NCBI GenBank assembly: GCA_964036045.1
Contig: OZ038378.1
Span: forward strand, 188,232,001-188,296,000
DNA: 64,000 nt
Source of the DNA: Eutreptiella sp. 'Long Island Sound 2002'
Lineage: Eukaryota > Protista > Euglenida
Direction of reading: 5' to 3'
Position numbers and translations under genes: made by a program. Of the stretch, positions 1,564-48,900 are shown in pieces (within the stretch, counting starts at the first letter, position 1; each line of letters begins with the position of its first letter). A model generated the notes under the pieces. The model was not told where the DNA came from. It did not search any database and saw only the letters and a program-made list of their open reading frames with translations.

Positions 1564-2481
1564 GAACGTGCACTAGCGGTGGATGTGGCCGTGCAGCTTA
1601 GGGACCAAGCCTGGTAGGTAGGTGCCTGGCTGCACCGCGATGCCAACCACATCTGGCACCGCTTGAGACGCGGCCGTGCATGCACCCTCCACGTTCCGTT
1701 CACCCCCAACCCACTGAATCTCCCCCTCATGGCCCAGGTGGAGCACCGTGTACTCTTGCTTCGCGAGAATATTATTGAGCGTGCAGTTGTGTTGTGCCGC
1801 GTGATGGGCAGCTACAACCTTGCGGCTGATGGCTGCCGCATCTCGTTTGATGTAGCGATGGTCATCGCCGAAGACACTTTAAGTGGGCAACACTACCTCA
1901 CCGGCATGGACAACCCACTGTGCAGCCCCACATTGCGACGCGCGCGTCCGGAGCGTACCCAGTAGGTTATAGCCCGTGGCAGCAAAACCACAACCCTGAG
2001 AAAAGCCCTCACACGTGGAGACAGGGGGGGCCAGCCCGCGAGTGGTGACAAGGCGGACGTTCTGACGAGGGTAAAACCCACTAGCCCACTCCCCAAATGC
2101 GCATTGTGTTGACCACAGCCGGTTGAGACGGGCCAGAACTCCTCTGATGGGCGTGTCGAAGGCACCGCTTTCGTCGGCATCGACGATGTGCGCCTCCGCC
2201 GTCTACTGCACTGCTAGTACCACCGACGCGCGCACGGTGAAAGCCATGTGCTGGGGGGATATTTCCTTCCGGTCGGAAAACGTGCACCCATCGAAATCGC
2301 CGGCCATGTCTGCACGGTACATTGTTTCTCGGTGAACTGCACTGGCCTCTAAGCGATTGACCCCTGAGCCCAGTTTAATGGGCCTGTAGGAGCAGAATAG
2401 CCACGGGTGTCCTTGTTTTTCTATCCCTAGTTGCACCGCCATATCGCTAAGGGCATGTGGTGCCGTGCGCAGAACGTTCAA
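1564..2481 (-). pseudogene. LINE reverse transcriptase core (frameshifted)
   Basis: YRPIKL, HGF, D...GAFD, GFSQG and FGDD motifs read by hand on the minus strand. Confidence 0.85.
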
Positions 2482-6916: not shown

Positions 6917-6976
6917 GTTGCCAAAAAGTGGTGCTGTCCCCTGGCTTTTTGAATGCAGCAGTTCGTGGGGCAGCAG
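6917..6976 (+). CDS. Candidate exon, 60 nt, phase 1-1: (G)CQKVVLSPGFLNAAVRGAA(G)
   Basis: gcacAG acceptor; GC donor GCGAGT; has the family PGF motif and AAG ending. Confidence 0.45.
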
Positions 6977-9900
6977 GCGAGTTTCTTGCACAGTGATGGT
7001 ACTCACGCTGGTGGGCTCCCTACCTCGAGTCATACACACACGAAAAGCAGCGGCACGTGGGCAAACCAACTTTTAGCTCCAATCCGAACCAACAGTAGGC
7101 AGCAACAGCATGCAGCGCAAGCGCCAGCAATCGACAGCATGTAATAACATGCGACGCCACATCATGCAACAGCATGCGACAATACAACATGCAACAGCAT
7201 TTAACAATATGCAACAGGCTGCGCCTTGATAAGGGCAGACAAATTTTTCACTGGATATTGCTGTGCACTGCCATGAAACAAGTTGCCACAGTCAAACCTC
7301 CTGGATTGCTGTGACTGAGGACACATCCTGTGGGGGGTGCAAGACGCGCAGTTGTGTAGACCGAGCGCAGGGTCCTCAATGAATTCAATGTCAATGACAT
7401 GTACCGCCATGCAACAGCAGCAAGCAACACCGGGCAACAGCACCAGGCAACAAGGGGGTGTATACAGCTAGGCCCTGGCTGGCAGCTTAACCTCTCCTGG
7501 GAATGTGTTCGAGGTGAGTAAAGGAAAATGACACCAGATGTAACTGTAACATAGGAGGTAAATCTGCAGGAAGAAATTCAGTGTGCAGCCCAGATTGCAT
7601 ACGGGGGAGTGCAGGCAGGCCAATTGAGTTGGACAACAAAAACAACATGCTGAGCTTTTCAGAGAGAGGTCATGTCCATTGTGCCCAGAGTGTCTGTAAC
7701 TGAAGAGAACTTGTGTGTGTGTTCTTATGGCACTGCGTGCTGTTTTTTTGTTTTGTGGATGGTACTACTCCATTCAGATTCACAAAGGGGATGGACTCAA
7801 AATGGCTTAATTTTGGCGAGAACGGGTCCACTCCGGTCTTATTCCGGCCGCCTACAGTTTCGGATGTCATGCTTGCGAATTACTGACCCCCTCCCCCCAC
7901 CTAAACAACCAGCCTTAATGGAAGCCCCCCGCCCCCCATGCCCAAGAAGGGGAGGGCTCCTCCAACGGGTACGACCCCTCAGGCACGCATGGGCCCTTCC
8001 ACAGGTCCCTCTGAGCTGCCCTCTTTGTCAGCCCTGCTGCATGCGATTGGCGCGCCCTGTTCAAAAGGTGTGCGGGCGTCCACTTCTGCCGTGGGTTGCC
8101 TTTGCCCGTGCCTGTGAAGATGCCCCATAGGGTACAGGCTCATGGAGGGAGGCGGTGCCCACTCACCCCGAGCAACGCCGCTCAAGGAGAAGGGGCTGTC
8201 CGCCCAAAGGAACAAGGGCTCTGTTGCTGAAGAGACCGAAGACCTTCGTCGAAGGGGGTGCTGCGTCGTGCCCGTGTTGTTGCCTTGCAGTTCTCTTCCC
8301 AGTGCCTCGAGGGCCCTGCGGATCTCCATTGATTTGGGAAGTCGCGCTTTCAGCTTCAGGCCAGGCCAGGGGGGGCTCATAGAGCCTGGGGGGGCAAAGG
8401 GGGGGTCTGGGGAACGGGCACAATTGACAGGGCCATCGATCAGTCACCAGCTGAAGGCCCCAACGATTTCTTTTGGGGGGTTCAGCGGTCAATTTCGTTC
8501 TGCACTCAGTGCGAACCGAAGGATGTCTTTTCTGGACCGCTGCGGCGTGCTGATTCCAAAACCGCCACTTTTCAATTTGTCGAAGTTTGGGGTCCAGATG
8601 AAGTTCGGGGGCCCAAGGGGTTGGTCCCGGTTGGAGCCCCGGCAATTGAACCTTTTTTTGTGGAAGACGGGGGGGGGGGGGGGGGGCTCCTGGACACGGG
8701 GCTCCATTGACCCCTTCGAAAGCCCTTTCACCCAGTCCCTCCCTGCGGCCCTGCAAAGCCTCTTCTCCTTCTCTCACACGTCCGCACAGATGCAATCCCA
8801 TCGAAGTCCTACCCGAGCCTACTCCTGTTGAAAGACAGTGCAGGTGCCTGTGCCGCATTGACCTGTGTCCTGTTCTGGTCATCTCCGCGCCTGTTGTGCA
8901 TGCGGTGCTGGGGGCAGTGCGCACTGGTGTGATCAGGGGGGAGGGGAGGGCGGCTTCCACCGGAAGGCGTCCGCGTGATGGTTTTCACACACTGCCCCTT
9001 GTTCAATGCCCCCCCCACCCCAAAAAGGCAATGGTCATGGCGTCGCGTTTCTGTTCACACCCCTGAGCCCCTGTGGGTGTGATGGCCTGCGTGATTTGTG
9101 ATGTGTGATGATGAGCGGCACGCCCACTTTGTTGCCTGAATTGCGCCAAACAGCTGCTACCTCTCGAGCCCCCGCATGCGCCAGGTTGCGAGCCTCTTCC
9201 CCCCCCCCCCCCCTCCACGTTGGTTGTGGTGAGCACCTCCCAGCCTGGGGTCTGCGTGATGACCGCATACCGGGCACTGATCAGGCCGTCAGGGGAGGAC
9301 GCCATGGGCAGAAGTTGCATTCTGGATTCCCACCCAGGCAGGTGGATGCCCACGGCAGTGCGGATGCTCGCAGTAGTCATACCCTCCCCCCCCCAGGGCT
9401 TCTTTAGAAAAATTAAAAACCAAGGGGGGGGGACCCCTCCCCCAAAACCCCCTCCCCCCCTCCCCAGACCAAAGTGACCATAGTGGGAAAAAACGAAATT
9501 TACAATAGGGAAAATCTGGTCAGGCCATTCTTGGTACACCAAGTTTTGGGTCCAAAACCCCCTCCCCCCCTCCCCCCCCCTTGCTCAAAAGAAGCCCTGC
9601 CCCCCCCCCCCCCCAGCCAACATGTTACGCCGCTCCTTGGGTCTCTTCCAGGAGGCAAAAGATGTTCTGAGAATGTGTTGCAGGGCACAGACTTGCCGGC
9701 TATTGCACACCACACATCTTGTGTAAACCACATCCCCCGCACACGCCACGCAAACCAGGCAGACCGAACCGACCGCGCACGCCTCATGCGCCGTGCAGGC
9801 CACACGAACTGCCGATCCCGCACCGCACTGCCCGCGCCCTGACACGTCCCGTGCAACCCACACCGCGGGCACCACCGGGTCCACTGCCAGTCCACGTCAG

Positions 9901-12900
9901 CCCAGGGCCTTGATGCGATGTCGAATTCGCCAGGACACGCAGCACCAGCCCCGAGGGCTCGTCAGGAGCGCGTTCTCGAGCACTCCCCAAAATGAGACCA
10001 CATGGTCCCCCCCTGGACGGGTGCGTGCTACAGAGGGGGAGGGGGGGTGGAGCACAACAGCCGTCCGCCATTTGTAACCTGGGCACAATGGCATCTGGTA
10101 AAATGGGTACCAACGGTCAGTGAAACGGGACCTGCCTGCCCTTCTCTGCACCAGGGGTGGATATAATAGTGACGACATTACCGGGGTGGGGGTGGGGGGG
10201 GGGGGGGGCGTTGAGCCGGGAGGCAGTGATGACGGAATGACGATTACGATTTGCACCTTTTTCGCTTTACAGGTATGTGTGTTCGCAGAGTTGGATGAAT
10301 CTGCAGCTGCGCTACCACCTGGGTTTTGCACCCCTTTCCTTGCTGTGTCATCACAGATTGTACCCCACAGTCCCTTGCGCTTTTTCTCCCTTTCCCAGGA
10401 CATCAAATGCAATTTTGTACCTCCTTGCTGCTTGCAGAAATACCATGGTTTTTCTCCCTTGTTGCGTTCCTGCTACCAACACAAATGTGGTTGTGAAAAC
10501 TGTAAACAGTGACAGGGTGCTTTTTTTCCATTCAGATTGCAGATTCATCCAGTAGCTCGTCTGGAGCCTCGTCCAGTGGTGACGTCGTCTCCATCTCAAG
10601 TTCCAGCTCAGACAGCTCCAGCTCAGGCAGTGCAGACACAGATGGTTCCGAACTGCAAGCCATTTTGGCAAAATGTGTCAAGAAATAATTGCACACTGTG
10701 GACTGTCTTCATGGGATACATACAGCACTGTGCATTGTAGTGTTTTGTGTCAGGAGGGGCAGATCAGTGCAGTAGCATAGTGGTATAATGCCCAGGCCTG
10801 AGGAAAGACGGTCGTGGGTACAATCCCAGTTGTACCCACACTGCCAGCGCTTTTTTTTTTGTGCCATCAGACCTGGCGCTTTTTTTTGTCAAACTGCCGA
10901 CAAAACTGCCGTTCAGTCACACGGGAGAATCGTAATCGTAATCGTCATCGGGGGGGGGGGGGGGGGGCTGGGGGGGGGACCCCCCCCCCCCACTATATCC
11001 ACCCCTGCTCTGCACCAAGCCTTGCCACTTGGGCCCAGTAAAGGTTCGCGCAATTTTCGGCCGAATTAATTTTGTCAGAGGCTTGTTGCACGTGTATTTC
11101 GCTGAAGTTTTGCGCGGGCTGAAGTCCCGAGTGCGGGGCACAGATCGGCGAACGCAGCGACGGGAGGTCTGCTGGGGCACTTTGGGTCAAGCAGTCCACC
11201 AGTTTGCAGACGGTTTGAGACAGTAGTGGAGTGCTAAGGGTCCAACCGTGAGAGACGGTTCGTAAACAAGGCGGCCGTCGCGCTGCGCCCAGACGAGGGT
11301 AGATGGGGGTCACAGGTCATTGGTGTCGTTGTCTGGAGGAGCCTCTGGCCCCCCCAAATTGAGCTTGGGATCCGAGACACCGACTGCAGGGAGATGCGGG
11401 CCGGCATTGTGCTTCCCAGATTCACTGCCACCTCTCCAATCTGGCGGCCTGTGACCCGCACATGCCCGTGGCTTCCCAAGTGGCTGCAGCACCCCTGTGT
11501 GGTCTTGTTTCAGGTGCCCTCAATGCGACGGGATTTCCCTCATTGTCCAGTCTGCTCGAGGCAATCGGAGCCCCATGGCCACACGGTGTGCCTGCTTTTG
11601 CAAACCTTCTGAGGTGGGGTTTGGAGCTGCAACTTCAACCGGAGGAGTTCGCTGGATCGCCCCCCCTTGTCCCTGGGATTTCGAAGCACGTCGCCCATGC
11701 AAATCCAACCGCCGTAGGTGAGCAAGCAACCGCCATCGAGTGACCGCACGATACGCAGTCGGGCTGCCGTTCCGTCCTCACCCAGTGACTCCTCAAGGCC
11801 CCCCCCCCCCTTTGGCCCTTGCAGCTCAGTCACTTTGAGCTCCAAAATGTGCAGACGCAACAGTATTCCAGACATGCCGCCTCTCCCGTCCATCGGTACG
11901 CACAGTCAGGGCTACTAAGGCTCCTCATCAGGGCCAGCCTTTGGGAATCCCCCCACCCCCGCTGGCTAGGGGATTTTTGGGGGTTCTTTAGGTCGTTCGG
12001 TGGGGTCGGTGGATTGGGTGGGAAGCCCCCGCCCCCCCCCCCCCCCCGGGGGGGGTTGTCAAGCCCCGGTCTGGCTACGAATCCTCCCCCAAACAATAGG
12101 AACCACCGGCCACACCAAAAATGAGCAGCAGTTCTGATTTTTTTTTTGAGTGGTAGGGGTGTTTGGAGGTCAACGGGCACGGGCATTTCGTAGAATCAAA
12201 AGTTGGCCTGCCTGACTGACAACCCTCCACAACCCTCCACAACCCTCCACAACCCTCCACAACCCTCCACAACCCTTCACAGCCCTCCACAGCCCTCCAC
12301 AACCCTCCACAACCCTCCACAACCCTCCACAGCCCTCCACAACCCTCCACTCTCAACAACGATAACCCTCAATAACCCCCCACAACCCTCAACAGCCTTC
12401 ATGAACCCTATAAAGGGATACGCAGTCGCAGCCCCATTGCATCAACTGTATAATGCAAGTGCTTGTGCCGCGCATGTATCGCACACATGTCATTGTGCGG
12501 CAGATGTATCGTCCGTTTCACTCCCGGGACTGCGGATGTTGAAAGACGTTTTAGGTATCAATAGGAGACTGCGCTGTTGCTTGTTGCTATTTGTGGCGAA
12601 AAACGGGCGCGTGTACTGGGTGAGGGGGTCGAAGGAGGCAGGGGTCTCGGGGTGTAAAGTGGGTGGGCCTACATTGCCCCCCCCCCCCCCTGATTGAAAA
12701 ATTATGTTCACCACAACAACGAACGCGTTACCCCTTATCAGAATACATCGATACAGCTGGTAAATGCATCAACTTTCCGCCAAAGCGTTCAGTTAACTTC
12801 TGGTGATAACTCACGTGGCAAAAATCTTTTAGAAACATGATCTTTTTTGTTCAAATCTCTCTTTTTTTTGGGGGACGGTTTACGAAGTGTTGTATTCCGT

Positions 12901-15900
12901 CGGAAAGTTCCAAACAAAAAAATTAATTTCAAGGCGAAAAATTCCGGTTTGTTCGAAAACTTCAGCGAACCATTTTTTTTATGAGAGCGCCATCAAAAAC
13001 GTGTCGTGAAGCATTGATTGCAAGTGTCCCAAGCTACTGAAAAAGCTATTGTTCAGCATAACCGTTGCAACAACGTGCAAGTAATTTTGAAGTTACACCC
13101 CACGGTGAAGAAAATGCGCAGGCCTTGATGTTGATAGAAATCTTCATTTTCGATGCAATGCACATGCAATGTGACAATACTGTTCATCAACCAGTTGCAC
13201 AAACGCTCACTCACATGCCGGGTAGGAGGTGTGCATCTCAGGAAGTGACTGCCACCGGACGGCATGTCCCCCGCGTCCTTCGGACCGCCAACACACAAGT
13301 ATTGCACCGACACTACAAGTGGCATCACAAACAATCACCAATGGACCAGGTCGTCAAGGCCGGCCTGGTGAGCCAGAGCAAAAGCATTTTGTAAAGGGAT
13401 ATGGGACAATCGGGCAGGGATGTCTCCATGTCGCCGTGTACGATTGCGGGTATGATTACAATTACGAGTCGATTGTACAATTTCCGTTGACCACATTTGA
13501 GGTCGTTCACCCAGTGACACCCGACCGTTGCGGTTTGGTTCGGACTGGGTCGCATGTGCCAGAGCTAAACGCCAAATCCCCTGCGGCACGACGGCAGCCA
13601 GCGCTGAACGGAACAGAGCGAGCCTCCAGCGAGGGCAGCCAGTGAGGGTGTGTGTGATTGGGGATGATTGATGTGTGACCACATGATCATTGCAGGTCCC
13701 GTCGGGTTTCCTTGTCTGAGCGCTGTGATGCGGTCCAGCGGTGATGCCCAGTTGCAAGGTGTGCCCCCCGACACCAAAAATGTGCCGTCACAAGGCACAT
13801 CCAAAAGGACGCAGTCGAGACTACTGCCGGGCGGCACGATTGCAGTGGCAAGACCCCGTGGGGCGTTTGTCCATCAGGCAGGGGTCCCCAATGACCTGAT
13901 TTTGGGCTAGCCACTTTGGTTGCTTACCAGCTCATGCCTTGTCCTTTGGAATCCTATGTCATACCCAGGGAACGTGTGCAGATTGATATCAGTCAGTTCC
14001 AGGCAGACAGACCATCGCCAGCCACGCCAACGCCATCGCAGAGCCGGAGTAAGTGCAGGGGGGGGGGGGGGGTCATTTAACAACGAGATTTGGTTATTCA
14101 TTTCCACTGAGGACCGCTCCTTAAGGTCAGTTCTCTGGGACGGTAGTGCACCGTCCGCCGTTCGCTGGCTGTTGGCAGTACTCCACGATCCTTGACAGTG
14201 CACGTGTGCAGCAACGACACCACACAAATAAAAATGTGCGCGTTGTGCCAGAAACGACTGCAACTTGACGGCACCGGCGGCGCGCGAGAAGGTGCCCGCA
14301 ACCGAAACGCGAGACGCAAGGGCGAGAGGGCGCGGGAGGGACCAAGAAGTCCGGGAGTTTCCGCCGTCTGACGCCATTAGGCGGCCCAGACGACGTGTTG
14401 TTTGGCAGACCTTCAAAAGTGTTTCGGTTTGGGGCGTCGCCCTTCACGAACTGCTTTCACACATTATTTCATGCGGTCCGTCGACGTCGGTGCACATTTG
14501 TGTGTGGCGTGTCTTCCAAACTGCACCGCACCGCACTCCATTTCCGCTCGTCAGGATTTGCATTGCCGGTGCCGCCACCCACAGAGCAACTCGAAGACGG
14601 TGTGTGCGCGCGCGCGTACCCGCGTGTGCCCGTGCGTGTGCCCGTGCGTGTGCGTGTGCATGGGCCTGGGTCTGCGCGTGTCCTACGGTGAACAGTGTGA
14701 CTACCGGGAGCAGCCGGTGGGGCAGCACAGGCAGGCCACGGCATCTGACCGGCTGCCCTAGAAAGGCACCCGTGCGCTTAAATGGCTTCATGACGTTCTC
14801 TTTTGGAGAGGGGCCTTCGTGGCGCCTGACGGGATGTTGTCTGCGGCCCGTGTCTCAATACTGCCGCACCACCGGCTGTGATTTCCCTCAGGTTCGGCTG
14901 AAGAGGCGCGCATTGCGGCGTCTGGTGCTGGGCTGGCCACATTGCAGGCCGCTGGAGGTGTGAAGGTGCACGGAATAGACGAGGTGCACGCACGGGATGG
15001 GGCCAGGGGGGGCGAACGGGAATGCAGGGAGAGGCAGTGGCCAGAGGGGGAGGTGGTGTCACTGTCCGTGGGGGGAGCGTGCAGACTTGTGGCTGAATGG
15101 ATGAATTGGAAGGAGTATGGCCACCCCACGCCCTTCCCCTGCCCCCCCCCCCCCCGCGCGGCCCCACGACAGAACAGTCGTGAGGGGAAACATCCAGTTT
15201 TGCCAAAGCCAGTTTTTTCGGACGTTCTGCCCCCCCCCCCCCCTCGTTGCCACCGAGTGACCGACACCCCAATGACCGCTGGAGCGAGGCAACCACACCG
15301 TTGAGCCCCCACGGGAGTACAGGAGTGCCTTAGTAGATCCACAGCACTGGCCCGTCCCGCTTTGTTGTGCTTGTGTTTGGTTGTACCATCCACTGAGGGT
15401 GCCCCTGCTGCAGTGCAAGGCCCCACCATGCCCCTGATGCTATGCAGCTGTGCCCATGATGCCATGTAAAGATCGCCCTGTGTGGCTGGGCCTGACATGG
15501 AGGCTGCACGATTACGCATTGCAGGTCCGCACCTTTCGGCATTGGCATTGCTCTATCCACCGCACCTTTCGGCATTGGCATTGCTCTATCCACCGGATGG
15601 GCTGGAACTTCTGCAGGCTGCAGCAGGTCGAGGTGTGTTGCCCCTCTTCAACCGATGTTCATGACCCATGCAGCCCAGGCAGTGTACCGCTGCACCCTCC
15701 CCTCCCGCCCTCTTACACTTTGACGCAAGCACGTCACTGAGCACTGTTGGCATTGACATGTAGCGTTCCCAAATCCGGAGTTTGATCCAACTCAGTTACA
15801 AGCATGCGGCCTGCGTCGAGGGCCAAATTGGGAGGTGCGAAGTTTTTTGGGCCAAAACAGCAATTTTTGGTCTCAGGCAGCCCAAAAACGATCAGACCAT

Positions 15901-18900
15901 GATTAGCAGTGGTTACCGACTGCACTGAACCAGCCCATTTGGCCTGTCAAAGAGCTGATTTTAGCCTGTAGCCGCCTAATATGTCCAAGAAATGCCTGGA
16001 AAATGGCCCCAAACGGCTCAGAGCCTTCCAAGCACGGGGGCCGATCCTGGTCGGGACCCGACCCCAAGGGGGGGGGGGGGGGGGACCCCTCTACGGACCC
16101 CAAAATTGTCGTACGGAACAATGTGCTTTGTCGGAGCCGGAGGCGCCGGAGATTTTGTTTTAGGCATATGGCAGGGGGAAATTTTTTCGTTCGACCCTAT
16201 GTGTCTGTACTCAAAATACTCAGAATTTCGTGGAGAATTCAAAAATGGCTGAAAAGCATAAAAAAGGATTTTGACCCTGACCCGACCTCCGGGTCGGACC
16301 TTGGCTGATGGGAGTCTGTTTGAGCGTTAGCCAGCGGTCGTTAAGGGACGTGATTTTTTTTTGTTAAGGTCCCCCGCTTTGAAGCGGTGGGGACCCCCGA
16401 GGCGGCAGGGGTTATGCGGCCACCTTGCCCACTTGTGGGCCACCTCTGATTCTGCCCCCCGCTCTAAAGCGGTGGGGATCCCCCAAGCGGCAGGGGTTAT
16501 GTAGCCACCTTGCCCACTTGTGGGCCACTTCTGATTCTGCAGCCCGCTCCGAAGCGGTGGGGATCCCCTAGGTGGCAGGGGTTATGTAGCCACGTTGCCC
16601 ACTTGTGGGCCACCTGTGGTTTTGTCCCCCGCTCTGAAGTGGTGGGGATCCCCCAGGCGGCAGGGGTTATGTAGCCACCTTGCCCACTTGTGGGCCACTT
16701 CTGATTCTGCCCCCCGCTCTGAAGCGGTGGGGATCCCCTAGGCATGTGGTGTGGCAACAAAGATGGCAAGTGCAGCACAAGTGTGCACGGCAAGAAAATT
16801 GACAGCAATTGCAGTCTCGCGTACCATCGGCTACGGCTAAACAGTGCGGCAACCCCAACAGCGATGAACCCTAGCACCAACTTGCCAGTTTGCTTCAAGG
16901 TGCTTGATTGCCGAAAATGGCATTGCACCTACGCCATGCCACACCACATGGCACAAGCGCACCCCGGTGTGTCCCATGACTATGCCGGGTGCAGCGAAGA
17001 GGAGAAAACAAAGGTGTTGCAAGCCTTTGACGATTTCCGGGCCCCATTGCCACCGAAGGCGAAGCCTGCTGCGCCGCCGGCCCTACCCAGTGTTCTCCGT
17101 GCTCTTCTCTCTGGGCCAAACCAGGGTAGTAGTAGTAGTGGTAGTAGTAGCAGCAGAGCTCCACCACCAATGCCTCCTCCAGTACGAGTGCATCCTGTGC
17201 GTCGGTAACCGGGTTCCACATGGGGGGAGAGAGAGCTTACCCAAGGCAGCCTAAGAGACATTTGATAGCCTTTGGGCGAACTCAAGGCAACATTCAGTAC
17301 TGCTCTGAAAGTGCTGCAGTGCAGCAAAACAATCATGCGCTATGACCGGTCACAGTGCATCTTGTTAGCTTTGTTTGTTTGCGCGCTTGGACGGGGCCTG
17401 ACGGAAAAGGTGCTGGGTTTGGGTCAGTGAAGGGGGGGGTCCCCCCCCCCCTTCGGAGGGGGGTGGGGTCCCCCCCCCCCCTACAGCCCCCCAAACTGTC
17501 GAACACCCCTCGAGGTCACACATTGGCTGGCGGCGGCCCCCGTGCTTCCAAGTTTGGCCGAAAGCAGTCCCAACCCAAGAATGGATTGCATCTTGAGCTC
17601 AGATCTGATTCCACAAGCAAGTGTACCTTCAAGCTGCCCCATTTTTTGTCATTTCCGCCAATGAGAATGGCTCCGACGGACGCCAAAGCCCCCATACGAG
17701 GGCGCACTAGGCTCCAAGGAGCGTGCGGGGGCCAAGGTGATTAAAAAAATGGCCATTTCCCCCACAGTTCTTCCCGGGCGTCTTGGGAGGTGGAAACAAG
17801 TATTTTTAGCTCCTTTTGAGCCTGTTTTTGCCCACCCGGGGGCCCAACAGGCTCCAAAGAATGCGACATTATGGATGCCGTATGCGTTAAGGGGGAGCGT
17901 TAGCGCACTAGGCATCTTTTTTGACCCGTGCCCCACCGGTGGCCTTTTAAGGGGTGCACTAAGGGGGCGCACTTAGCGCAGTGCAGCTATTTGGGCGTTT
18001 GGCTGTACTAGAGACCCATACTTTGAGATACTAGGGGCATCATTGTGACCGCTAGCGTAGGTTTTGGCTTCTGATTTTGTCCCCTTTGTTGGGGACCCCC
18101 GAGAATGCAGGGGTGACGTAGCATTTCCGCCCTCTTTTGGGCCCCAACCTTCCGGTGCTATTGAGGAAACCGGGACAATCTCTGAATCCACGCTTTGTTG
18201 CGTGGCCCCTTGAGTTGGGGTTAGGGACTCTCAATCCACGCTTTGTTGCGTGGCCCCTTGAGTTGGGGTTAGGGACTCTCAATCCATGCTTTGTTGCGTG
18301 GCCCCTCGGTTGTGGCATTCGGGTTTGGTTAGGAACATCTGGCGTGGCGGCCCCAATGAGTTGCACCAGTCGGTTTGTATTTTGTTGCATTTTACACAAT
18401 TTTGCATTCGGAGGCAAGTGCACAGGTGTACAGACGTGAGAGACTGTAAACAGTCAACATAGCTGTGCACGCAGAGACATCCATGAGTGCACAACTGCCA
18501 GTGCACGCGCATAAAGGGGTGCATGCAAAGACCTGAACACAAGCGTGCCTGTACAGACATAAACAGCAGAAGGAGGATGAATCAGACACGGAGGGGCACA
18601 AGGGCGGGTACTCCACACCAATGCAATCCTGCTCGCACAAGCATCACGCATGACTGTGTCCTATGCACTCATATGCACCCGCGTATGTCTGTGCATGCAT
18701 GCCACTATGTGCCTGTATGTGCCCGTGTGTATTAATGCCCTTGTTTCAGGCGCCAACCTTCCAGCATTAGCACTGCTGTACCCACCTGTTGCTGATGGGC
18801 CGCAGAAAACCATGAATGGGCTGGAAATTCTGCTGGCTGCAGCAGGTGTGCCAGACTCCTCTTCATGTATGTACATTTGCGTTTTCCCATTCTTTACACG

Positions 18901-33900: not shown

Positions 33901-36900
33901 ACGCATTCCCCCCTCCCCCGCCCCGCCCCCAGTGAGGGACCACCTCCCAATTTCCGTTTCGCCGCCGTCTGGGGGACAATGCAAGTGCCTCTCGAAAACT
34001 TGAACAGCCGCGCACGCCTGGCGCCGCGTGCAGCACCGCCGCAAACGCGCGTCGACTGCCGCGCAGCTCCGAAGGGTAGCGCGTGGCGGGCACCCTCCGG
34101 CCCTGGTTTGGGCGTGCGTGTGAAGCCACGGGCTGCGACGTGCAGGAGGGGGGCGTCGGGATTGGGGTCGCTCGGAGGAGGCGGAAGCTGATCGGAGGGA
34201 GGCCGACGGTGGTCTTTGAGTGTCCGTTGGCGGTCATATGGTGACCGTCGGCGAGGGATCATCGAGAGCGGTTGAACAGTAACCAGCGCAGTCTTTGCCG
34301 GCGGTGCTCGCTCAACATCCACATCCAAATACAACCGCCGTGTGTCTGTAGGGACCCAACAGCCCCATTCACCGATACTCTGTTGCACGTTTCCTCAGAT
34401 GCTCGGATTCCAGGGTTTCCAGCGTTGAGCGTACTGTCGCATACGGCACGCATGCAAGGTACTGCTGCTGCTTCCCCTGCCCCCCTGCCATGGACCCCTG
34501 TGCAAAGCCACGGGGGTGGCCTGCCGTGGTATCGCATTGAAGGGGGTTGGGCTTGACCAGGGCGTAGGGCCAGGGTGACACGGTGCCACGACCCTTCCCA
34601 ATACATCATTTGCATCACAACGCATGGGCCCCTTAATGGCCACCTATTCGCAACAAGACCCTGCAAGCCGTCTCAGGCGGGGAGGTAGCCCCCCAAACAG
34701 TCATTCCAACGCTCCAACGAACCCCAACTGCGGCGGCAACGGTTTGTAACCGCCGCCCGCCTGCTCCCCAACTGCTTTCCCAACCAAAGTCTGGGAGTGA
34801 CTGAAGGTGAAACCTGTCAGCGACGGTAGGGGAGTGGACACCATGGGGGCAGATTGCTGCAGTGGTGGGCAGTGGGACTGACATTCCTCACTCAACCCCC
34901 CCACCCCCACCCCACCCTTCCTACATACACACCTCAGAACCACGCACAAAGTCCAGAGGCGCACCCCCACAAAACATCACCCAAGTGCGCGACCGGAAGC
35001 ACCGACCGGCGAAACTCCGTCTCAGCCCACCCCCCCCCCCCGTCTGGTCATGAGGCCACACATTTTTAAAGTGTTGTGTGCGGAGTGTCTGGGCACCCCG
35101 ACCGCGCCCCAACCACACGACGCAGAAGGAACGTACCTCCGTGAAGCTGTGAGGCGGGCCACTCAGCACAGTCATTCGTACCTGTCAGCCCCCCCGCCAC
35201 CCGACGTAGTCGCAGGGGCAGCGGCTGGGGCAAGAGTGGGGGTAGGGACCAGGGCCAGGGCAGGGGTGTGTACAGGGGCGAGGGGTGGCCAGGCGGGGAA
35301 GCCGGCAGGCCCCTGGCTTCCGGACGCAGTGGCGGGTGCCGCCCATGGGTCAGTGGTGTGTTGTCTGCCTCCATGCGGACCGACCGCATCGCATGCCTGC
35401 TCCCGTCTCAGACCAGCAATCCTCCTGCTTGAGGGCCTTGTTCACCGCAGGCAGCAGACCCAGAGTGCAGGGTATGCCCCCCGCCTCTTGGCGGCCTTTT
35501 CCCTCACTTGCCCTCCCGGCCGCCTTGGGAGTACACAGGGGGCTCATTTGACGTGTGTCGTGAGCACAAGGTGCCTCCGCTTTCTCGGCAGGCAGATCAC
35601 ACGGTGCCCTGACCATGCAAATGCGCAAGCCCACCCGTAATGACAGTTTACAGCAAATAGCTATCATAACAAATGACTAGGTACACTATGGTTATTGTTG
35701 TGATAGCAAGCCCTTGTTAAGAGAGCAAAGAATGAGTTCCATCACAACCACATGTAGTAAAGCCAGCCCCTTGTTCTGACAAGCGCTCGTTACAATTGCA
35801 AGCTTTGGGTCTCATGGCAGGCACTGGGAATGCCTCCATTCCGCAGGCGCCGCAGTGTAAGGGTAATTTGCCGTGGGCCAATTAGCACCGCATTAATTTC
35901 CCTCAATTTTGCGTGACCCTGCCTACGGGGTGGTCGGTCCGGTTGGGAACATGTTGTGTCACTGGGCTGTACAAAGGGAGACATTATGTGGGCACCGCAT
36001 GCACGGCACCGCACTCCCTGTACCCGGGCTGCCCGGTGCCGGGGCGCCGGCTCCTGCTCCAGCTCCTGCGGGGGCCTACGGCGGCCGACCTTTGGGGTCT
36101 GTAACGCGCTGCACGTATCGCGGAGAGCCCTTGTGACGTTTCGTTCACGACGTTGTGTTAGGCTGGCCTACAGAGCGCCAGTGGGGGAGGGGGAGTGGGT
36201 TGCAATAGGGAGCCCCTGTGATAATAGCGAAACCCTGAAGCACTTATTATTGTCGCAAGCATCCGCAAGCATTTGTGGATAGCAAGCACTTGTTGTGGTG
36301 GCAAGGCACGGTCAAGCACCAGGTATAATCGGGGATGATCAAGTTGTTCCTCCTTGCTACTCAGCCAGTGGCGTTTGCCCTGCATATCTCCCGCAGTCAC
36401 GAGCACAGTCACGAGACTCCGCAGCTCAAACCAGAGCACGATTCACGTATGTGCCCTGCGGTGGAGGGGCAAGGCAAGGGGCAGGTTGTGGTATTCGGCA
36501 CAAGTCCATCTGATTTGGGCGACCTTGTTACTGCTGGTGTGCGATGCAAATGAGGGCCACAGATCCCCCGCCCTAGGTCTCCCAAACGTGTGTCCCTGGA
36601 GGTTTTACCACGATACAACCAGCATCCAGAACTCGACGTCAGCCACAGCCCCACTGAAATAAAGATGAGAAGAGTCGCGATGAAGAGGGAGCGGACTGGG
36701 TGGGGGAAACAATTCGCCCCAGGGGCCGGCGTCATAGAAGCACCAAACCGCAACGCAACAAGGCACCCCGAAGGCGCCCTCAGCTGCTGCCCGCAGTCAG
36801 CCATTTGACAGCCGTGTGAGCCCCACTACTCCTTGCCTTTCGTCCCCGCCCACCGACCCGCTCACACTTGCTCCATGCCTCTTCTGTCTGGCCTCGCTTC

Positions 36901-42900: not shown

Positions 42901-45900
42901 GCGGGTTGTGGATAAAGGCCCGGGACAACTCTGGGGTTTCTGTAAATCCTGGGCCTGGCAGCAACTGCAAGCTTTTCTCAGTGCACAGGGATACTCCCCC
43001 CAGAGCAGGGACATGGCAGAGGTACTGCAGAGCCTGCAAACCCAAATTGTGAATTCGGGTTGGCCATTGAATCCGCAGGGCACCATGGTCCTGATGTACC
43101 TAATTGGTAAAGCGAAATCACGAATTCACATTGCTCTGCAGTGGCGTCCGATTGCAGCGGCAGCGAAACCCCTCATCACAAAAGGCAAGCCCAGGATTGC
43201 TGCTAGGGCTTTCACGTGTTTTGTTGAAATGATTGTTGATGAGCTACCAGCGGGGTTTTTAAACCCGCAGCTTACAGGGCATGGGCACATGGGTACAGAA
43301 ATTGTGTCCCTGAGGGGCGGAGTTAATCGGGGAGTTGATTGTAAAGAACAATTTAACGTTATAAAGCCTTCCGCAGTGGTCGGCCACATGAGAGAGGCAG
43401 CCGCGTGGCTAACGAAACGGAAACACTTGAGAGCCTTGTTTAGAGCATCAGTAAGTCCTGCAAGAAATTGGGCAGGGCAGGGCAGGCAACCCATAAAGGA
43501 TTTTGGATAATTTCCATGGAAGAACTCATTGAGCTGGTTAGTTTCAGCCTACTGGAGGACAACATGGTAGTTGCAGGTGGTGAGTTATGGAAGCGAACAC
43601 AGGCGATTCCCATGGGAGGCCCGTTTAGCGCTCAAAGCGCTGACTTACATAGTGTTTGGAGCTGCAAGCAGTTTGTGCACAAGCTTAGTGAGTTGGGCAG
43701 GTTTGAAACTACCCCGAGTGGCGTTGTACAGTGGAGTGGAGCTTGTGGCGTCCTGGCGTTGCAACAGTTTTGCGACAACCTGGTTGTAGCGGCTAAAGGC
43801 CCCAACGCAAGACACTCAATGTCTCTGGTGTGCACAGTCATGCAAGATGTCTCGGGTTTGAAGGTAGAGTGTGAATGCCGTGATAAGGATGAAACCGTTG
43901 TATGCGTGGGTGTGTGCATGCGTGACAGTTTAACTGCAATGGGAGTCACCATCCTCCGGGGAGCACCGGAAGTATGCGTGCATGCACATCCCAATGCGCT
44001 AAATGGTTCATGGGGTTTGAAGTTGGGCATCCCACTGCAGAGTTTCTGGGCAGTGACGCAGCGCCAGGTTACAAACATGTTTACCGGTGGCCTGTGCAAC
44101 GTGTTGCCTTTTCTGGGTACGTGGTCAGGGCTGCTTTTATCAGCAACTGCATGGATGCAAGTAGGTGTGCCGTCTTCGTACCCCCCACATGTTGTCCGGT
44201 CTTCCATGATATGTGCCCTGGTTCGGGTTTTGGCGCACACTGTTTGGGATGTTGACTTGTCAGTGACATGGGTCAATCACATTATCAGGCGCCTGCCCCA
44301 GGAGCTCCATTTCACCCTCTCCGATTCGATCTGGTGGCTCCGGGACAATGCTGTCTGGCATGCCCAGCAGTATGCATCATGGCATGTGCCACACGTCGGG
44401 GCTTGCAATACATGGTGTGGTGACTGGCACGGTGACGGCCCGGCACTATGGTCACACAGTCAACGTATCATGTTGCAGGGAGGGGGCATGTGTTTGGTGG
44501 GTTGGAACACCCACCGGCGATGGGGAGGCAGCCATCAAGGGTAATATAGGCCGGGCCGGATGTGCTATACATGGTAACAGGACATTGGTTCGTGATTTTC
44601 TGACCTTGTTCGGTAGTGTGCTGTAGTATGGTATAGTAGCTTGAAGCCTTGATTGCGCGGGAGATGACGAACTGTGATAGTGTCTGGTGTTGTGTGGGCA
44701 GGACCCTATCTCTGGTTGTTGTCCTGCAGCGAAAGGCGCCTATGGCAATGTCACTGATGAGCATTTCATAACCGTGGGCTGAACTGTTGCCTGTGCTTGT
44801 TGGGGACTTGGGCCTGCAGAGCAGTAGTTCGTCACTTGGTTCGACAGAGTTCCCTTGCTGTGAAAGTTAGCCTTTTTCTTGTTGACCTTTCGTGTATGTT
44901 TTCGCCTACTCTGTTCTTATTCGTTTGCCGTCTTGTTTTGCTGTATCTTCTTTTGTTGTTTGTGTTTGCTTTTTTTTGTCCACGCTGCTTTGTCTCTTGC
45001 GGTGTCGTCTTTCTTTGTCTGTTTGTAGTTGAATTTGTCTTTTGTGCTGTATATTGTTTGTGTTTGTGTGTCTCGTTGAGGGGTAGCCGACGGCGGTTTG
45101 GGGGTGCAGATGGCGTTTTTTTGGGGGGGGGGGGGGTAACCTTGAGCATTCTATTTTGGCCATGTGACGGAGGCTTTTTTGCCTCTTTTTTTTTCCCCTC
45201 ACGGATGGCCCTCCTGAAAGGTCAGTTTCTGAGGGGAGGCACACCCACCGGTTGGTGTTGTGTTGGGTGCCCCCCACAGCAGCAGCATTCTACTGCAGGC
45301 CACTGGTCTGGTCTCTTGGGTCATAAATGTGTTTCCACTTCTCTTTATCGCATTCATCATTGCCAAATAGCACAATGTCCACCATTTTTGTGGCCACATA
45401 CTAAGACATACCAAAACGCAAATGCATGCGTGTTTTTGTTTGTTTTTGTTTTATTCGTCTTTTGGACATACAAATGGAACCCCATGCCCCCATAACTCAC
45501 CGTGCTTTGTGCTCCCAGAGGTAAGTCAGATGGTTCTAGCGCACTCACTCTCTCTGCGACTCAGGCAGGGCACTCCTTTATGACCCCGTCTTGCCTGCTT
45601 TGCTTCACTCACCAGCACCCTTAGGTAGGGCTCACGACCTCCAGCTGCTGTCGGTTACCCCCTAACCGCCGTCGGTCATCCTCCAACCGCCATTGGCCAC
45701 CGCTGTTGGCCACCGCCCAACGGCCGTCCGTGACCGCTCCAATGTGACGGAGGGTATGCTCACCCAGTTCCCGTTTCCGTCGAATTAGGCAGCGTCCTGG
45801 ACGGAGGTGGTCTGCGAGATGAGATGCAACGGGTCACCCAGAGGTCCGGGGTCCGCCCAAAGGGTTCTTGTCTTCACCGTGGCACTGGGACCATGAGTGC

Positions 45901-48900
45901 TACCTGTTGTGGGGTGGGGGGGTTCTGGGCAGGACTGGGACTCTTGTGCGTCTCCAACAGGGCGGACGTGCCCGTTGATATGCCGCTGGCACCAGGCAAT
46001 TGTCCGAGGGCGCACGCCTTGGGACGGGGTTTTTGGACAGCTCTTGCGACCCCTCTGATTAGTCGGATCACTTCATCCGGATGCGCAGCCCCCCCCCCCC
46101 CCCATACATCCACATACACATACATACATCCACACAGTTACTCAGCCTTTATGGCAAACCTCCCCCAACATGCCCAGTCCAGGTGTGGTAGGGGCGCGTC
46201 CGGCCTTCCGTGACATGGCGGGGCCCGCCGGCCATTTCATAAGGTGCCTCATGCCTCATGCAGTCCCTGGCAGGGTATGCTGCGCAGGCCCATGCCCTTG
46301 TCCTCGACTAGGTGCTTGCTCTGGGCAGTCCTCGCGTCCGTGAGTCCCGGGAGGATGGCATGTCTGCCTCCGCTGTGGGGTTCAGGGGCATGGACGGGGG
46401 GTCAGTGAAGCTGTGAGTATGGTGCTGGGGAGGGACACATGATTAAGAACTATCATGCTGTGGACAGGATAGTGGCATCAAGTTGCACAAAACAGGGGAG
46501 ATAAACACGAGCAACAGCTACCCCAAAAATGGGCTGTAGACTTTGTTGTGGGGTGAAAAGCTATGTGGACCTTGTAGACTTTGCTGTTGACTCTGTAGAC
46601 CGGGCTGTAGACTTGTAAACTAGTCCAGGTCTACATTGCCCTGTGCACTCTGTAAACCTGGGCAGTCTGGCAGACCTAAGAGGGGAAGACCCTGCCAGAG
46701 AGAAGAAGGACACAATGCCGGTGCAGGCCCAACCTGAAGCATGAAAGATGATCGATGGGGGGCCCTATCGTATTGGGGTCCCCCAAACAGGGAGGAGACC
46801 AATGGCTACCAGATGTAGATAGGTTGTATCCCAAAAATTTCAATTACTGTATCAAAGTGTATCCCAAGGTCCACATGTGCATATCATGTGTGTATCTCGA
46901 CTCTCAAGAGTGTGTATCAAATGTGTGTCCCACCCTATTCACCTTCTGCGGACATTGCTGATTCCTCCTCTGAGGGATCCGATGACAGCAGCACAGCCAC
47001 AACATCATCTCCATCGGGCACAAATTGGCGGTGACTCTGAGTCCGATGGTGAGTCATCAAGTGGGAGTTCAACATCACCATCAGTGAGCCCCTAGCATCA
47101 GATGCACATTTTTTTGTGATTCACACATGCTACACACCCCGGAAGCTTGGGATACGCGTGTGTGATACACACAATTCATGAAGAGAGAAAAGAGATCTTG
47201 GCCATCCCCCAGGGAACTTGCTATCCTCTGCTGGTGGTGTTGGTGCTTGTGTGTGCATTTGGTGATAAGCCCCCCAGTGCCCGTAGTTTTGGTGAGGAAA
47301 GGTTTGCCAATGTCTAGCCCCTCCCCCCCCCTCCCCGCCTCAGCCTCCCTGAGAGGGTGGGGGTCCGAAACTCAACCCTCAACAGGAAGATGATTTTGTC
47401 TGACAAAATGAGGGGTTGGCACCGGCTTCAAGGTGCAGCGGCACCTCTGGGGGCAGGGTACACCCATCGCCCCATTGCCGACCCGCCCAAATCGTCCTCT
47501 TTTTTGATGGCCTGCTCTGGTTTGCGCAGGCGACGCTCCGGACAACTCCACCAACAAAGTGTCTCTCACCCGCTCCACTGACGGACCAAGACTCCTCCAT
47601 CGCTGCCCCGTCTCCGGTACGCCCGCCCCCTTCTGTCAAGCACAGAGCCCTGCCACAAGGACTGGGATTGAAGAAGAGGGAGCGGAGAGGGGGTCTCGAG
47701 CGCGCGAAAGCGGTCGCCGGCGTTCGAAAAGCCATGCTGCACCATCAGGCCCGAGCCTGCCCCCAGTCACTCTGATGTGGACCCGGACCGGCAATCGGAC
47801 CCCCACGGGTTGCGGCCCAGAAGGGAAGGGGCAGCCCTCGTCGCGGGCCACTGCTGTGCCGTGCTTCTCCCCCACTCCTCCTCGAGGCTGCTCTGCCACA
47901 GTGAGCAGCCTGGCTCTGCAACTCAGTCCATTGCAGGACATGTTTGCACTAAAAACAAAAATACCTCTGACTGTCCAGTCGCCAGCCCAGTATTTAGGCA
48001 CACCATTGATCGGCACTGCAAGCCGCATGTGAAGTCACGTGAATGCCGAACTGACGGCGCTGGGAGTGGTCTGGGATTTGAATCCGGACAACGCATACCC
48101 CCCTCTCCCTCATCCTGAAAAAAGGAGGGGGGTCAGGGACAGGGGGCTCAAAGCCCGCCAACAGAGCAGAGCAACAGCACGGCCTCCCCTTTTTTCTGTT
48201 AGAATACGTCGACCTCCAACCGTCGTTGGTTGCCCTTCAAGTGCCGTCCAATTGTGTGCCTAAGTACTGGGCTGGCGACTGGACGGTCAGAGCTAGTTTT
48301 GTTTCAGTGCAAACATGTCCTGCAATGGACTGACAGTGTTATGGCTCTGTAAAGCAGGGTGCGCCTGCTGGAGGCTCCGTCCACACCGTCCTTCTGCCGG
48401 CGCGGACGCACCTCCATCGGATCTGAACGCATTCGCACTCCTGCAGGTCGTGCCGGGGGATGGGTATTCAAAAATGCCCCCCAAAACCCGAAAAAATGAC
48501 CCCCCCCCGCGTCCCCCCTCCTGAAACCCCTGCCCACGCCGCCGGGGTTGGGGTCCAGCACTGAACTGAACCCCCCGCCCCCTTTACTTTTTTTTTGGGA
48601 CCGGGCGCTGACCGGATTCGATTCACTCCGAGGCAATCGACTAGCAAACTGTTCCGGTGCGGGTGGGGGGGGGGGGTAAGGGGCGCAACCCCAAACACCC
48701 GCACGCCACACGAATGTTCCAGAAGAACAGATGGTACTGAGGGACACCAGAAGTCGGTTTGCCGCACCCCCTGCAGCCGCTGCTGGCTGTTGTGCGCATG
48801 GACGTTTCTCGTCGGGTGTACTGGCTCTCGTCTGCACTCCACATTATGCCCCGTGACCTCCGCCGCTGGTACCGCCTGCCGTTGGATTGCGGACCATCAC

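What the first reader, a model, noticed from the sequence alone, without database searches (positions are those of the whole stretch)
6917..47616. Array of about 20 phase-1 symmetric short exons encoding a Leu-rich peptide family: possible combinatorial-splicing gene
Exons of 51-102 nt are all 3n long, AG/GT-bounded (one GC donor) and phase 1 at both ends, spread over 40 kb. They encode related modules (PHLSALALLYPP, GFPSLSSL, LPGLRMLKD, DGLATLRAATG, GLEILLAAAG). Related exons differ mainly at synonymous sites (e.g. TTG/TTA, TAT/TAC, CCA/CCG), which points to protein-level selection. Any subset can be skipped in frame, as in micro-exon genes or Dscam-like systems. I recognise no family for the protein, so this may be an undescribed variable-protein system.
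Basis: partly seen in the sequence, partly recalled or inferred. Interest (0 to 1): 0.85.

Follow-up and report, generated by a model that had tools for sequence, protein, structure and literature searches.

The report
Repeat-protein gene built from small exons
This is a real, expressed, single-copy Euglena gene built from many small in-frame exons that each add one copy of a short leucine/alanine-rich helix motif, and the RNA available shows neighbouring exons joined in order, so it looks like an ordinary repeat protein of unknown family and not a mix-and-match splicing system.

Summary
The exon array is real. I place 15 strong exons at window 8005-34458 on the + strand, and one more 1.9 kb upstream of the window. 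All are 45-102 nt, multiples of three and phase 1 at both ends. All have a CAG acceptor, end in a split G and have a GT(A/G) donor. Contigs from two RNA runs carry five of them (11514-14957) joined one after another with none skipped. Only the phase-1 frame is open across those five.

Most exons carry a short helix-like motif, roughly L-x-x-L-(L/R/K)-x-A-x-G, usually at the exon's end just before the split glycine codon. In motif cores, paralogous exons differ at 72% of synonymous sites and 10% of non-synonymous sites, so the protein is under selection. Linkers are not conserved. The array grew by duplication of exon-plus-intron segments, some of it recent: a 0.9-kb copy at 98% identity and a perfect 33-bp repeat inside one exon.

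The gene is single-copy. It has no Pfam match and no relative among 1.84 billion representative proteins. The six exons at the finding's edges and in between, including both stated ends (6917 and 47616), are unverified.

Nothing supports combinatorial splicing, though RNA coverage is thin. The scan has noted similar phase-1 exon arrays at other loci of this genome (e.g. s1-222720), but not this gene.

The parts
8005..8067 (+). Exon, 63 nt, phase 1-1; peptide contains LPSLSALLHAIG
   Evidence: CAG acceptor, G|GTGTGC donor, open only in the phase-1 frame plus one other. Paralogue of 11514 with saturated synonymous change. No RNA laid here.
8790..8843 (+). Exon, 54 nt; YPSLLLLKDSA(G)
   Evidence: Splice format. 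Its last three bases CAG explain why the RNA contigs align from 11511, not 11514. This is indirect support for an 8843>11514 junction.
11514..11585 (+). Exon, 72 nt; GFPSLSSLLEAIGAPWPH
   Evidence: RNA contigs X1 record 7 (314 nt) and X3 record 15 (151 nt) cover 11511-11584 and 11529-11584 with 0 mismatches, and both continue elsewhere.
12504..12554 (+). Exon, 51 nt; SLPGLRMLKDVL(G)
   Evidence: The depth in this bin equals contig depth x 51/200 in both RNA runs (X1 0.7, X3 0.9). Splice format.
13696..13758 (+). Exon, 63 nt; PVGFPCLSAVMRSSGDAQLQ
   Evidence: RNA depth in bins 13500-13899 fits 63 nt (X1) and a 43-nt contig end (X3). Sequence.
14555..14599 (+). Exon, 45 nt; FALPVPPPTEQLED (a linker exon without the motif)
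   Evidence: It is needed to fill the 197-198 nt of X1 record 7 that lie downstream of exon 11514 (51+63+45+38). The bin has RNA depth. Splice format.
14892..14957 (+). Exon, 66 nt; SAEEARIAASGAGLATLQAAG
   Evidence: X1 depths of 0.13 and 0.42 in the two bins fit the first 38 nt, where the contig ends. Splice format.
15525..15626 (+). Exon, 102 nt; two copies of PHLSALALLYP (a perfect 33-bp tandem repeat) then PDGLELLQAAA(G)
   Evidence: No RNA contig reached it. The DNA-run contigs break at 15556/15566 inside the 33-bp repeat, as expected for a repeat longer than the assembly word.
18750..18845 (+). Exon, 96 nt; ANLPALALLYPPVADGPQKTMNGLEILLAAA(G)
   Evidence: AlphaFold2 on this peptide alone gives two helices, residues 3-9 and 17-30, mean pLDDT 79.
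22063..22158 (+). Exon, 96 nt, identical to 18750-18845
   Evidence: It lies in a 918-bp copy (18419-19326 vs 21722-22639, 98.1% identity) that includes the intron flanks.
23487..23558 (+). Exon, 72 nt; PHLSALELLYPPHRALECLLAAA(G)
   Evidence: Against exon 15525: 4-5 synonymous and 1 non-synonymous change in the first motif.
26195..26257 (+). Exon, 63 nt; SSTTPHAPCIDGLARLRAAT(G)
   Evidence: It is 81% identical to 28164-28289, flanks included.
28180..28242 (+). Exon, 63 nt; TGSMAHAAYIDGLATLRAAT(G)
   Evidence: Against 26195 the linker half differs at 6 of 10 residues and the motif half at 1 of 10.
30150..30203 (+). Exon, 54 nt; ATSSDAFEGLLALRDLG
   Evidence: Splice format and motif. No RNA laid.
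34399..34458 (+). Exon, 60 nt; ARIPGFPALSVLSHTARMQ
   Evidence: Splice format. GFP.LS motif shared with 11514 and 13696. No RNA laid.
6917..6976 (+). Candidate exon with a GC donor (unverified); SPGFLNAAVRGAA(G)
   Evidence: Boundaries and an open frame only. It scored below the listed hits of the motif HMM.
25775..25834 (+). Candidate exon (unverified); PGFASLALLCPGYSPAKEE
   Evidence: Boundaries and an open frame only.
26936..27004 (+). Candidate exon (unverified); PGLSYLSKVFAAKDAVQPVASK
   Evidence: It resembles candidate 32669-32734 at 7 of 12 residues. It has no counterpart in the 28.4-kb copy.
32669..32734 (+). Candidate exon (unverified); LSGLRSLSAVFKASQYAALER
45565..45624 (+). Candidate exon (unverified)
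   Evidence: Boundaries only. It lies beyond a retroelement that another note places at 39421-45100.
47530..47616 (+).
   Evidence: Boundaries only.

Best explanation
This is one single-copy protein-coding gene of Euglena, on the + strand. It spans at least from 1.9 kb upstream of the window to 34.5 kb and is built from 16 or more short symmetric exons (3n, phase 1-1).

Each exon encodes a variable Pro/Ser/Gly-rich linker, and most also carry one or two copies of a short Leu/Ala-rich helix motif: core L-x-x-L-(L/R/K)-x-A-x-G, with a second form L-(S/P)-A-L-x-L-L-Y-P-P. The motif usually ends the exon. Every intron splits a codon after its first base, a G, and the junction codon reads Gly or Asp.

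The array grew by repeated duplication of exon-plus-intron segments. Old copies keep only the motif, under purifying selection, and young copies are still near-identical.

Shown: the exons are transcribed, spliced at the predicted sites and, where seen, joined one after another.

Inferred: all exons are normally included, giving a repeat protein of some 350-450 residues or more that carries about 20 short hydrophobic-faced helices on flexible linkers. My best guess at function is a multivalent scaffold or structural protein whose helices each bind the same partner or surface. That part is inference from sequence alone. The confidence given is for the gene, its anatomy and serial splicing; the functional guess alone would rate about 0.3.
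For: RNA. X1 record 7 (314 nt) and X3 record 15 (151 nt) match exon 11514 without mismatch. Their remaining lengths and the per-bin depths fit the chain 11514>12504>13696>14555>14892 to two digits.

Coding. Across the five RNA-supported exons only the phase-1 frame has no stop; the other two frames have 4 and 2 stops.

Splice sites. All 15 strong exons have the same CAG|...G|GT[AG] format, and the junction codons read Gly (9) or Asp (5).

Motif. The patterns occur only on the + strand. The exon-end signature occurs 17 times on + and 5 on -. The HMM found no further convincing copies in 224 kb.

Selection. Motif cores differ at 28/38.7 synonymous vs 9/90.3 non-synonymous sites. In the pair 26195/28180 the linker half differs at 6 of 10 residues and the motif half at 1 of 10.

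Duplication. A 918-bp copy at 98% identity and a 127-bp copy at 81% both include intron flanks. There is a perfect 33-bp repeat inside exon 15525.

Copy number. Whole-genome six-frame searches return only the window itself, and DNA-run depth at the exons is 8-39 against thousands on the neighbouring repeats.

Composition and fold. L 19.7%, A 19.1%, P 10.8%, S 8.9%. The exon-18750 peptide is predicted as two helices.
Against: Only five exons have RNA support, from low-depth assembled contigs in runs labelled estuary metatranscriptomes. The joint table was filled by repeat noise from the DNA run, so the junctions are inferred from piece coordinates, contig lengths and depth arithmetic, not read directly.

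The start, the stop and any non-repeat domains of the gene were not found.

The dN/dS contrast is partly biased, because the pairs were chosen by peptide likeness.

The function is pure inference: no homologue, no domain, and a single-sequence structure model of one exon.

Confidence: 0.75

Rival explanations
1. Combinatorial cassette splicing. Because every exon is 3n and phase 1-1, cells include varying subsets and so make a family of variable proteins from one gene, as in schistosome micro-exon genes or tropoelastin.
For: The symmetric architecture allows it. Recent exon duplications show that the exon number is still changing. RNA evidence covers only 5 exons, and contigs drop rare isoforms.
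Against: Both RNA runs show the same serial chain with no skipped exon. The motif is under purifying selection, not diversifying selection. Symmetric phase is the automatic result of growth by exon duplication and needs no splicing function.
Confidence: 0.07
2. The repeats fold together into a compact alpha-helical solenoid, with one or two helices per exon, and not into a flexible array of separate motifs. The gene would then be a one-repeat-per-exon solenoid protein, like the LRR-per-exon gene that another note reports in this genome.
For: Repeat units of 17-34 residues. Two helices are predicted in the 32-residue exon peptide. A note reports a one-LRR-per-exon gene in the same genome (unchecked).
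Against: Exon lengths and linker sequences vary widely. Proline is 10.8%, and glycine or aspartate sits at every junction. Only about 8-10 residues per unit are conserved. There is no match to any repeat family in Pfam.
Confidence: 0.15
3. A non-coding or decaying transcript: the exon-like pieces are spliced, but the open frame is a by-product of GC-rich sequence, or the gene is a pseudogene.
For: Stop-free stretches are common in this 56% GC DNA. No homologue exists.
Against: Only one of the three frames is open across the RNA-supported exons. Synonymous sites are near saturation while the motif residues are kept. The same motif recurs 16 times on one strand only.
Confidence: 0.04

Closest known systems
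Tropoelastin gene (vertebrates)
   Same: [quoted passage not shown] It also has small exons, one sequence module per exon, a hydrophobic Gly/Ala/Pro/Leu-rich composition, and growth by exon replication.
   Different: No sequence similarity. There are no Lys-Ala cross-linking exons here (K is 1.8%). The motif here is a Leu-rich helix, not hPGhGG. This is a protist, no secretion signal was found, and no alternative splicing was seen.
Schistosoma micro-exon genes (MEGs)
   Same: Short symmetric exons separated by long introns (3-81 bp exons; bioRxiv 10.1101/2023.06.21.545858). The encoded protein is an orphan.
   Different: Exons here are 45-102 nt, not mostly under 36 nt. Exon skipping was not observed. 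A signal peptide and secretion are unknown. No homology.
Other phase 1-1 exon arrays noted in this Euglena genome (e.g. s1-222720, s1-222713)
   Same: The same genome and the same architecture: many small symmetric phase-1 exons, one peptide repeat per exon, tandem DNA duplication, and neighbours spliced together, according to those notes (unchecked by me).
   Different: A different peptide motif and a different locus. Whole-genome searches with these exons found no copies elsewhere.
Short amphipathic-helix ligand motifs (LxxLL nuclear-receptor box; Sin3-interaction motif of the form hydrophobic-x-x-hydrophobic-hydrophobic-x-A-A)
   Same: The conserved positions i, i+3, i+4, i+7 and the A-A pair in LEILLAAA and LECLLAAA fit such motifs. 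This comparison is from my own knowledge and is a lead only.
   Different: About 20 copies in one protein is unlike the known carriers. No binding partner is known. The motif is short enough for the likeness to be chance.

Membership tests
One-repeat-per-exon repeat-protein gene grown by tandem exon duplication (generic kind) | The repeat unit of the peptide coincides with the exon | tested here: met
   In 12 exons the motif ends at the split Gly codon just before the donor. Exon list.
One-repeat-per-exon repeat-protein gene grown by tandem exon duplication (generic kind) | Exons are symmetric (same phase at both ends, length 3n) | tested here: met
   All 15 of 15 strong exons are 3n and phase 1-1.
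One-repeat-per-exon repeat-protein gene grown by tandem exon duplication (generic kind) | DNA-level duplications include the intron flanks | tested here: met
   18419-19326 vs 21722-22639 at 98%, and 26178-26302 vs 28164-28289 at 81%.
One-repeat-per-exon repeat-protein gene grown by tandem exon duplication (generic kind) | Neighbouring repeat exons are joined serially in the mRNA | tested here: met
   Five consecutive exons lie in one contig of X1 and three in X3. The other exons were not covered.
Micro-exon genes (Schistosoma MEG type) | Most of the coding sequence lies in very short symmetric exons | tested here: inconclusive
   The exons are symmetric, but at 45-102 nt they sit at or above the upper end of the MEG range of 3-81 bp (bioRxiv 10.1101/2023.06.21.545858).
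Micro-exon genes (Schistosoma MEG type) | Protein variants are made by exon skipping | tested here: not met
   No skipping in the two RNA runs laid. The power is low.
Micro-exon genes (Schistosoma MEG type) | Signal peptide and secretion | not testable with these tools
   The first exon and the start codon were not found.
Tropoelastin-like elastomer gene | All splice sites are phase 1:1 | tested here: met
Tropoelastin-like elastomer gene | Hydrophobic G/V/P domains alternate with Lys-Ala cross-linking domains | tested here: not met
   K 1.8%, V 2.8%, and no KAAK-type exon.
Dscam-type mutually exclusive exon cluster | Exactly one of a cluster of paralogous exons is chosen per transcript | tested here: not met
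   The paralogous exons 11514 and 13696 are in the same RNA contig.
Any Pfam family or known protein family | Significant profile or sequence match | tested here: not met
   Pfam: no hit below E=0.25 for 8 exon peptides. The 1.84-billion representative search with a 3-exon profile gave one chance hit, in a 111-aa ORF of assembly GCA_001191645.1. The length-limited word search and the ESM Atlas gave nothing.

The most novel reading that the evidence does not exclude
Euglena uses arrays of symmetric phase-1 exons as an adjustable dial. Ongoing exon duplication and loss, here the 0.9-kb copy and the 33-bp in-exon repeat, and perhaps regulated skipping, would change the number of binding helices in a lineage-specific scaffold protein. 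Strains or cell states would then differ in valency. This would be one instance of a genome-wide, animal-like exon-modularity that arose independently in a protist.
Probability: 0.1. Interest if true: 0.6.

Novelty: new member of a known kind. Interest (0 to 1): 0.3.

Why it matters
On its own this gene adds an orphan repeat-protein family to Euglena and a clean example of a gene that grew by exon duplication, with old copies held by selection on a 10-residue motif and young copies still identical.

The wider point is that symmetric phase-1 exon arrays seem to recur in this 2.3-Gb genome: several other notes of this scan report them. That architecture is classically linked with animal extracellular proteins. 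If a genome-wide count confirmed it, it would bear on how exon modularity arises. This one locus does not show that.

Tried and rejected
1. I tried to recover the native spliced protein or transcript. A word-indexed protein search with the stop-free frame around exon 11514 found nothing. A profile of three exons against 1.84 billion representatives gave only a chance hit, an unannotated 111-aa ORF of assembly GCA_001191645.1 with HPDGLEMLQS repeats. An exact 32-nt exon pattern in JGI metagenome contigs found nothing.

2. Pfam on eight exon peptides and the ESM Atlas on exon 18750 gave nothing usable.

3. An all-against-all blastp of six-frame pieces was swamped by low-complexity Pro/Gly matches and was abandoned.

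4. AG/GT plus phase as a detector was rejected. It is as frequent on the opposite strand.

5. A leucine-rich repeat (LRR) reading was rejected. The LxxLxLxxN pattern is absent from the exon peptides (sequence inspection).

6. A peptide-precursor reading was rejected. There are no dibasic cleavage sites between the modules.

7. A search for a paralogue of candidate exon 26936 in the neighbouring duplicate found none.


Full report
ORGANISM AND SETTING

Earlier notes of this scan identify the genome as Euglena. The assembly has 2.28 Gb in 2317 contigs, and the window is C1:188,232,001-188,296,000. The window is about 56% GC and full of mobile-element debris and homopolymer runs. The published E. 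gracilis annotation has on average 8 exons per gene and a mean CDS of 1,149 bp, which is roughly 140 bp per exon (PMC11252322). A gene of 16 or more exons of 45-102 nt is therefore at the small-exon, many-exon end of the range, but it is not outside the organism's habits.

Three motif patterns hit 15 places on the + strand and none on the - strand. A GFP.LS pattern hits four places on + and none on -.

The boundary criterion by itself carries no weight. AG...GT/GC, 3n, phase-1 open segments number 9018 in the window. A strict form (CAG acceptor, last base G, GT[AG] donor) is as frequent on the - strand, 963 vs 1068.

What stands out is the combination. Fifteen segments between 8005 and 34458 share the strict splice format, and nearly all also carry the motif. 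In 12 of them the motif ends exactly at the G that the intron splits off (17 such signatures on +, 5 weak ones on -).

An HMM of the motif core, run over 224 kb (100 kb upstream to 60 kb downstream of the window) in six frames, gave 13 hits of 8 bits or more on + and none on -. Twelve are exons it was built from, lying between -1.9 kb and 28.2 kb. The one new hit, near 111 kb, looks like low-complexity noise. This is circular as detection, but it shows that no further copies lie nearby.

One more exon of the same format lies upstream of the window (L008:8095-8148, with peptide ATKANSFPGLLMLKGIA). The array therefore starts before the finding's first coordinate.

RNA EVIDENCE

Two metatranscriptome runs from different studies hold contigs that match exon 11514-11585 with no mismatch. 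These are X1 record 7 (314 nt, piece 11511-11584) and X3 record 15 (151 nt, piece 11529-11584). Both continue outside that piece.

The joint table was filled by repeat noise from the DNA run, so I reconstructed the chains from contig length and depth.

- X1 (depth 2.8). The 197-198 nt downstream of exon 11514 equal 51 (12504-12554) + 63 (13696-13758) + 45 (14555-14599) + 38 (the start of 14892-14957).
- The predicted per-bin depths are 1.04, 0.71, 0.06-0.10, 0.83, 0.11 and 0.42. The observed values are 1.04, 0.7, 0.08, 0.8, 0.13 and 0.42.
- Bin 14500-14699 is not in that list. It holds the 45-nt exon, and it reads 1.1 against a predicted 0.63; I put the excess down to repeat-derived contigs, because the DNA run is about 1,800 deep there.
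- X3 (depth 3.6). 56 + 1 + 51 + 43 = 151 nt. The predicted depths of 0.92, 0.07-0.13 and 0.70 match the observed 0.9, 0.11 and 0.7.

The 3-nt overhang at 11511 fits an upstream exon that ends in CAG. Exon 8790-8843 does, and exon 8005-8067 does not.

So five exons are expressed, spliced at the predicted sites and joined in genomic order, with none skipped, in two samples. No contig reached exon 15525 or beyond. That is lack of coverage, not evidence of absence.

IS IT CODING?

Across the five RNA-supported exons only the phase-1 frame is free of stops; the other two frames have 4 and 2.

In motif cores, paralogous exons differ almost only at synonymous sites:

- 8005 vs 11514: 10/12.7 synonymous, 5/29.3 non-synonymous.
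- 15525 vs 18750: 6/9.2 vs 1/20.8.
- 14892 vs 28180: 8/8.5 vs 2/18.5.
- Pooled over four pairs: 72% vs 10%, Fisher p=4e-12.

The choice of pairs by peptide likeness biases this. Even so, near-saturated synonymous change, with no detectable similarity in the flanking introns, means the copies are old and the motif has been held by selection. The linkers are free. In the pair 26195/28180 the first ten residues differ at six positions and the last ten at one, and pS=pN=0.18 over the whole exon.

ANATOMY OF THE PROTEIN

What follows is read exon by exon.

- Junction codons read Gly (9) or Asp (5).
- The composition of the 15 exon peptides is L 19.7%, A 19.1%, P 10.8%, S 8.9%, with few charged residues.
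- The shared core is L-x-x-L-(L/R/K)-x-A-x-G. Its conserved positions i, i+3, i+4 and i+7 would lie on one face of a short helix.
- Three exons add a second motif, L-(S/P)-A-L-x-L-L-Y-P-P.
- AlphaFold2 on the 32-residue peptide of exon 18750 alone gives two helices (residues 3-9 and 17-30) split by the Pro-rich turn, with mean pLDDT 79. This is weak evidence for helix propensity only.

HOW THE ARRAY GREW

A 918-bp segment (18419-19326) recurs 3.3 kb downstream at 98% identity. The exon within it is identical and the intron flanks are included. A 127-bp segment around exon 26195 recurs at 28164 at 81% identity. Exon 15525 contains a perfect 33-bp tandem repeat. Older copies keep only the motif. 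Symmetric phase is the condition under which such duplications keep the reading frame, so it needs no further explanation.

UNIQUENESS AND KINSHIP

Six-frame searches of the whole genome with three exon peptides returned only the window. The first-look filter is coarse: it missed in-window paralogues, so divergent copies elsewhere are not excluded. DNA-run depth at the exons is at the single-copy level.

No family was found:

- Pfam gave no match.
- The representative search found one protein at E=3e-4, an unannotated 111-aa ORF of assembly GCA_001191645.1 with HPDGLEMLQS repeats. I take it for chance.
- The word-indexed search, the ESM Atlas and a metagenome pattern scan gave nothing.

INTERPRETATION

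The best-supported reading is an ordinary, constitutively spliced repeat-protein gene of an unrecognised, possibly euglenid-specific family. It has one linker-plus-helix unit per exon.

The combinatorial-splicing idea rests only on the fact that skipping would stay in frame, and that is an automatic by-product of how the array grew. The RNA seen argues against it for five exons. The motif is under purifying selection, not diversifying selection. Paralogous exons also occur together in one contig, so a Dscam-like choice is out.

As for function, my best guess is a flexible multivalent array of short hydrophobic-faced helices that act as repeated docking sites, or a structural low-complexity protein. 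A packed helical solenoid is the main alternative. All of this is inference.

The closest architectural analogue is tropoelastin, where every border is phase 1:1 (bioRxiv 10.1101/2024.12.03.626628). The gene fails tropoelastin's compositional hallmarks and has no sequence kinship with it. Schistosome micro-exon genes (bioRxiv 10.1101/2023.06.21.545858) share the symmetric exons but not the observed splicing behaviour.

CONTEXT FROM THE SCAN

Several other notes on this genome report arrays of symmetric phase-1 exons at other loci, and one follow-up reports neighbours spliced together. I did not test those. They suggest the architecture is common here, which lowers the surprise of this locus and raises the interest of a genome-wide count.

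LIMITS

- The gene's start and stop, and any non-repeat exons, are unknown.
- The RNA evidence comes from assembled contigs at low depth.

Noticed in passing
window 15527-15592: A perfect 33-bp tandem duplication inside an exon, which doubles the peptide PHLSALALLYP. The DNA-run contigs break exactly there (15556/15566). It may be very young or polymorphic.
   Followed up: partly
window 2481-4307 (- strand): A 609-aa open frame with an endonuclease/exonuclease/phosphatase domain (Pfam PF03372, E=7e-6). It is probably a LINE fragment and sits in what would be an intron of the array gene.
   Followed up: partly
window 10100-11100 and 11900-12500: Very high-copy repeats: DNA-run depth reaches up to 49,000 against about 10-30 for unique DNA. 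They are also present in all three runs listed as RNA or probable RNA. They include a hAT-like element noted by others and a 10-bp satellite (CAACCCTCCA) at 12189-12433.
   Followed up: no
window 16288-16797: An 85-bp tandem repeat with about 6 copies at 86-93% identity. Related single units lie at 18090 and 61127.
   Followed up: no
runs X1-X4: Runs labelled estuary metatranscriptomes hold contigs identical to this Euglena gene's exons and to its repeats. Either this Euglena or a very close strain was present in those samples, or material was carried over.
   Followed up: no
window 15548-15610, 18770-18800, 23510-23535: The sequence L-Y-P-P-x(1-3)-L in three exons resembles the LYPxnL late-domain motif that binds ALIX. 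This is recalled from my own knowledge and is untested; the motif is short enough to be chance.
   Followed up: no
window 27022-27076 vs 28535-28590: A 55-bp stretch conserved at 87% between the two copies of the roughly 2-kb duplication. It lies outside any exon I could define and may be an unrecognised exon or a regulatory piece.
   Followed up: partly
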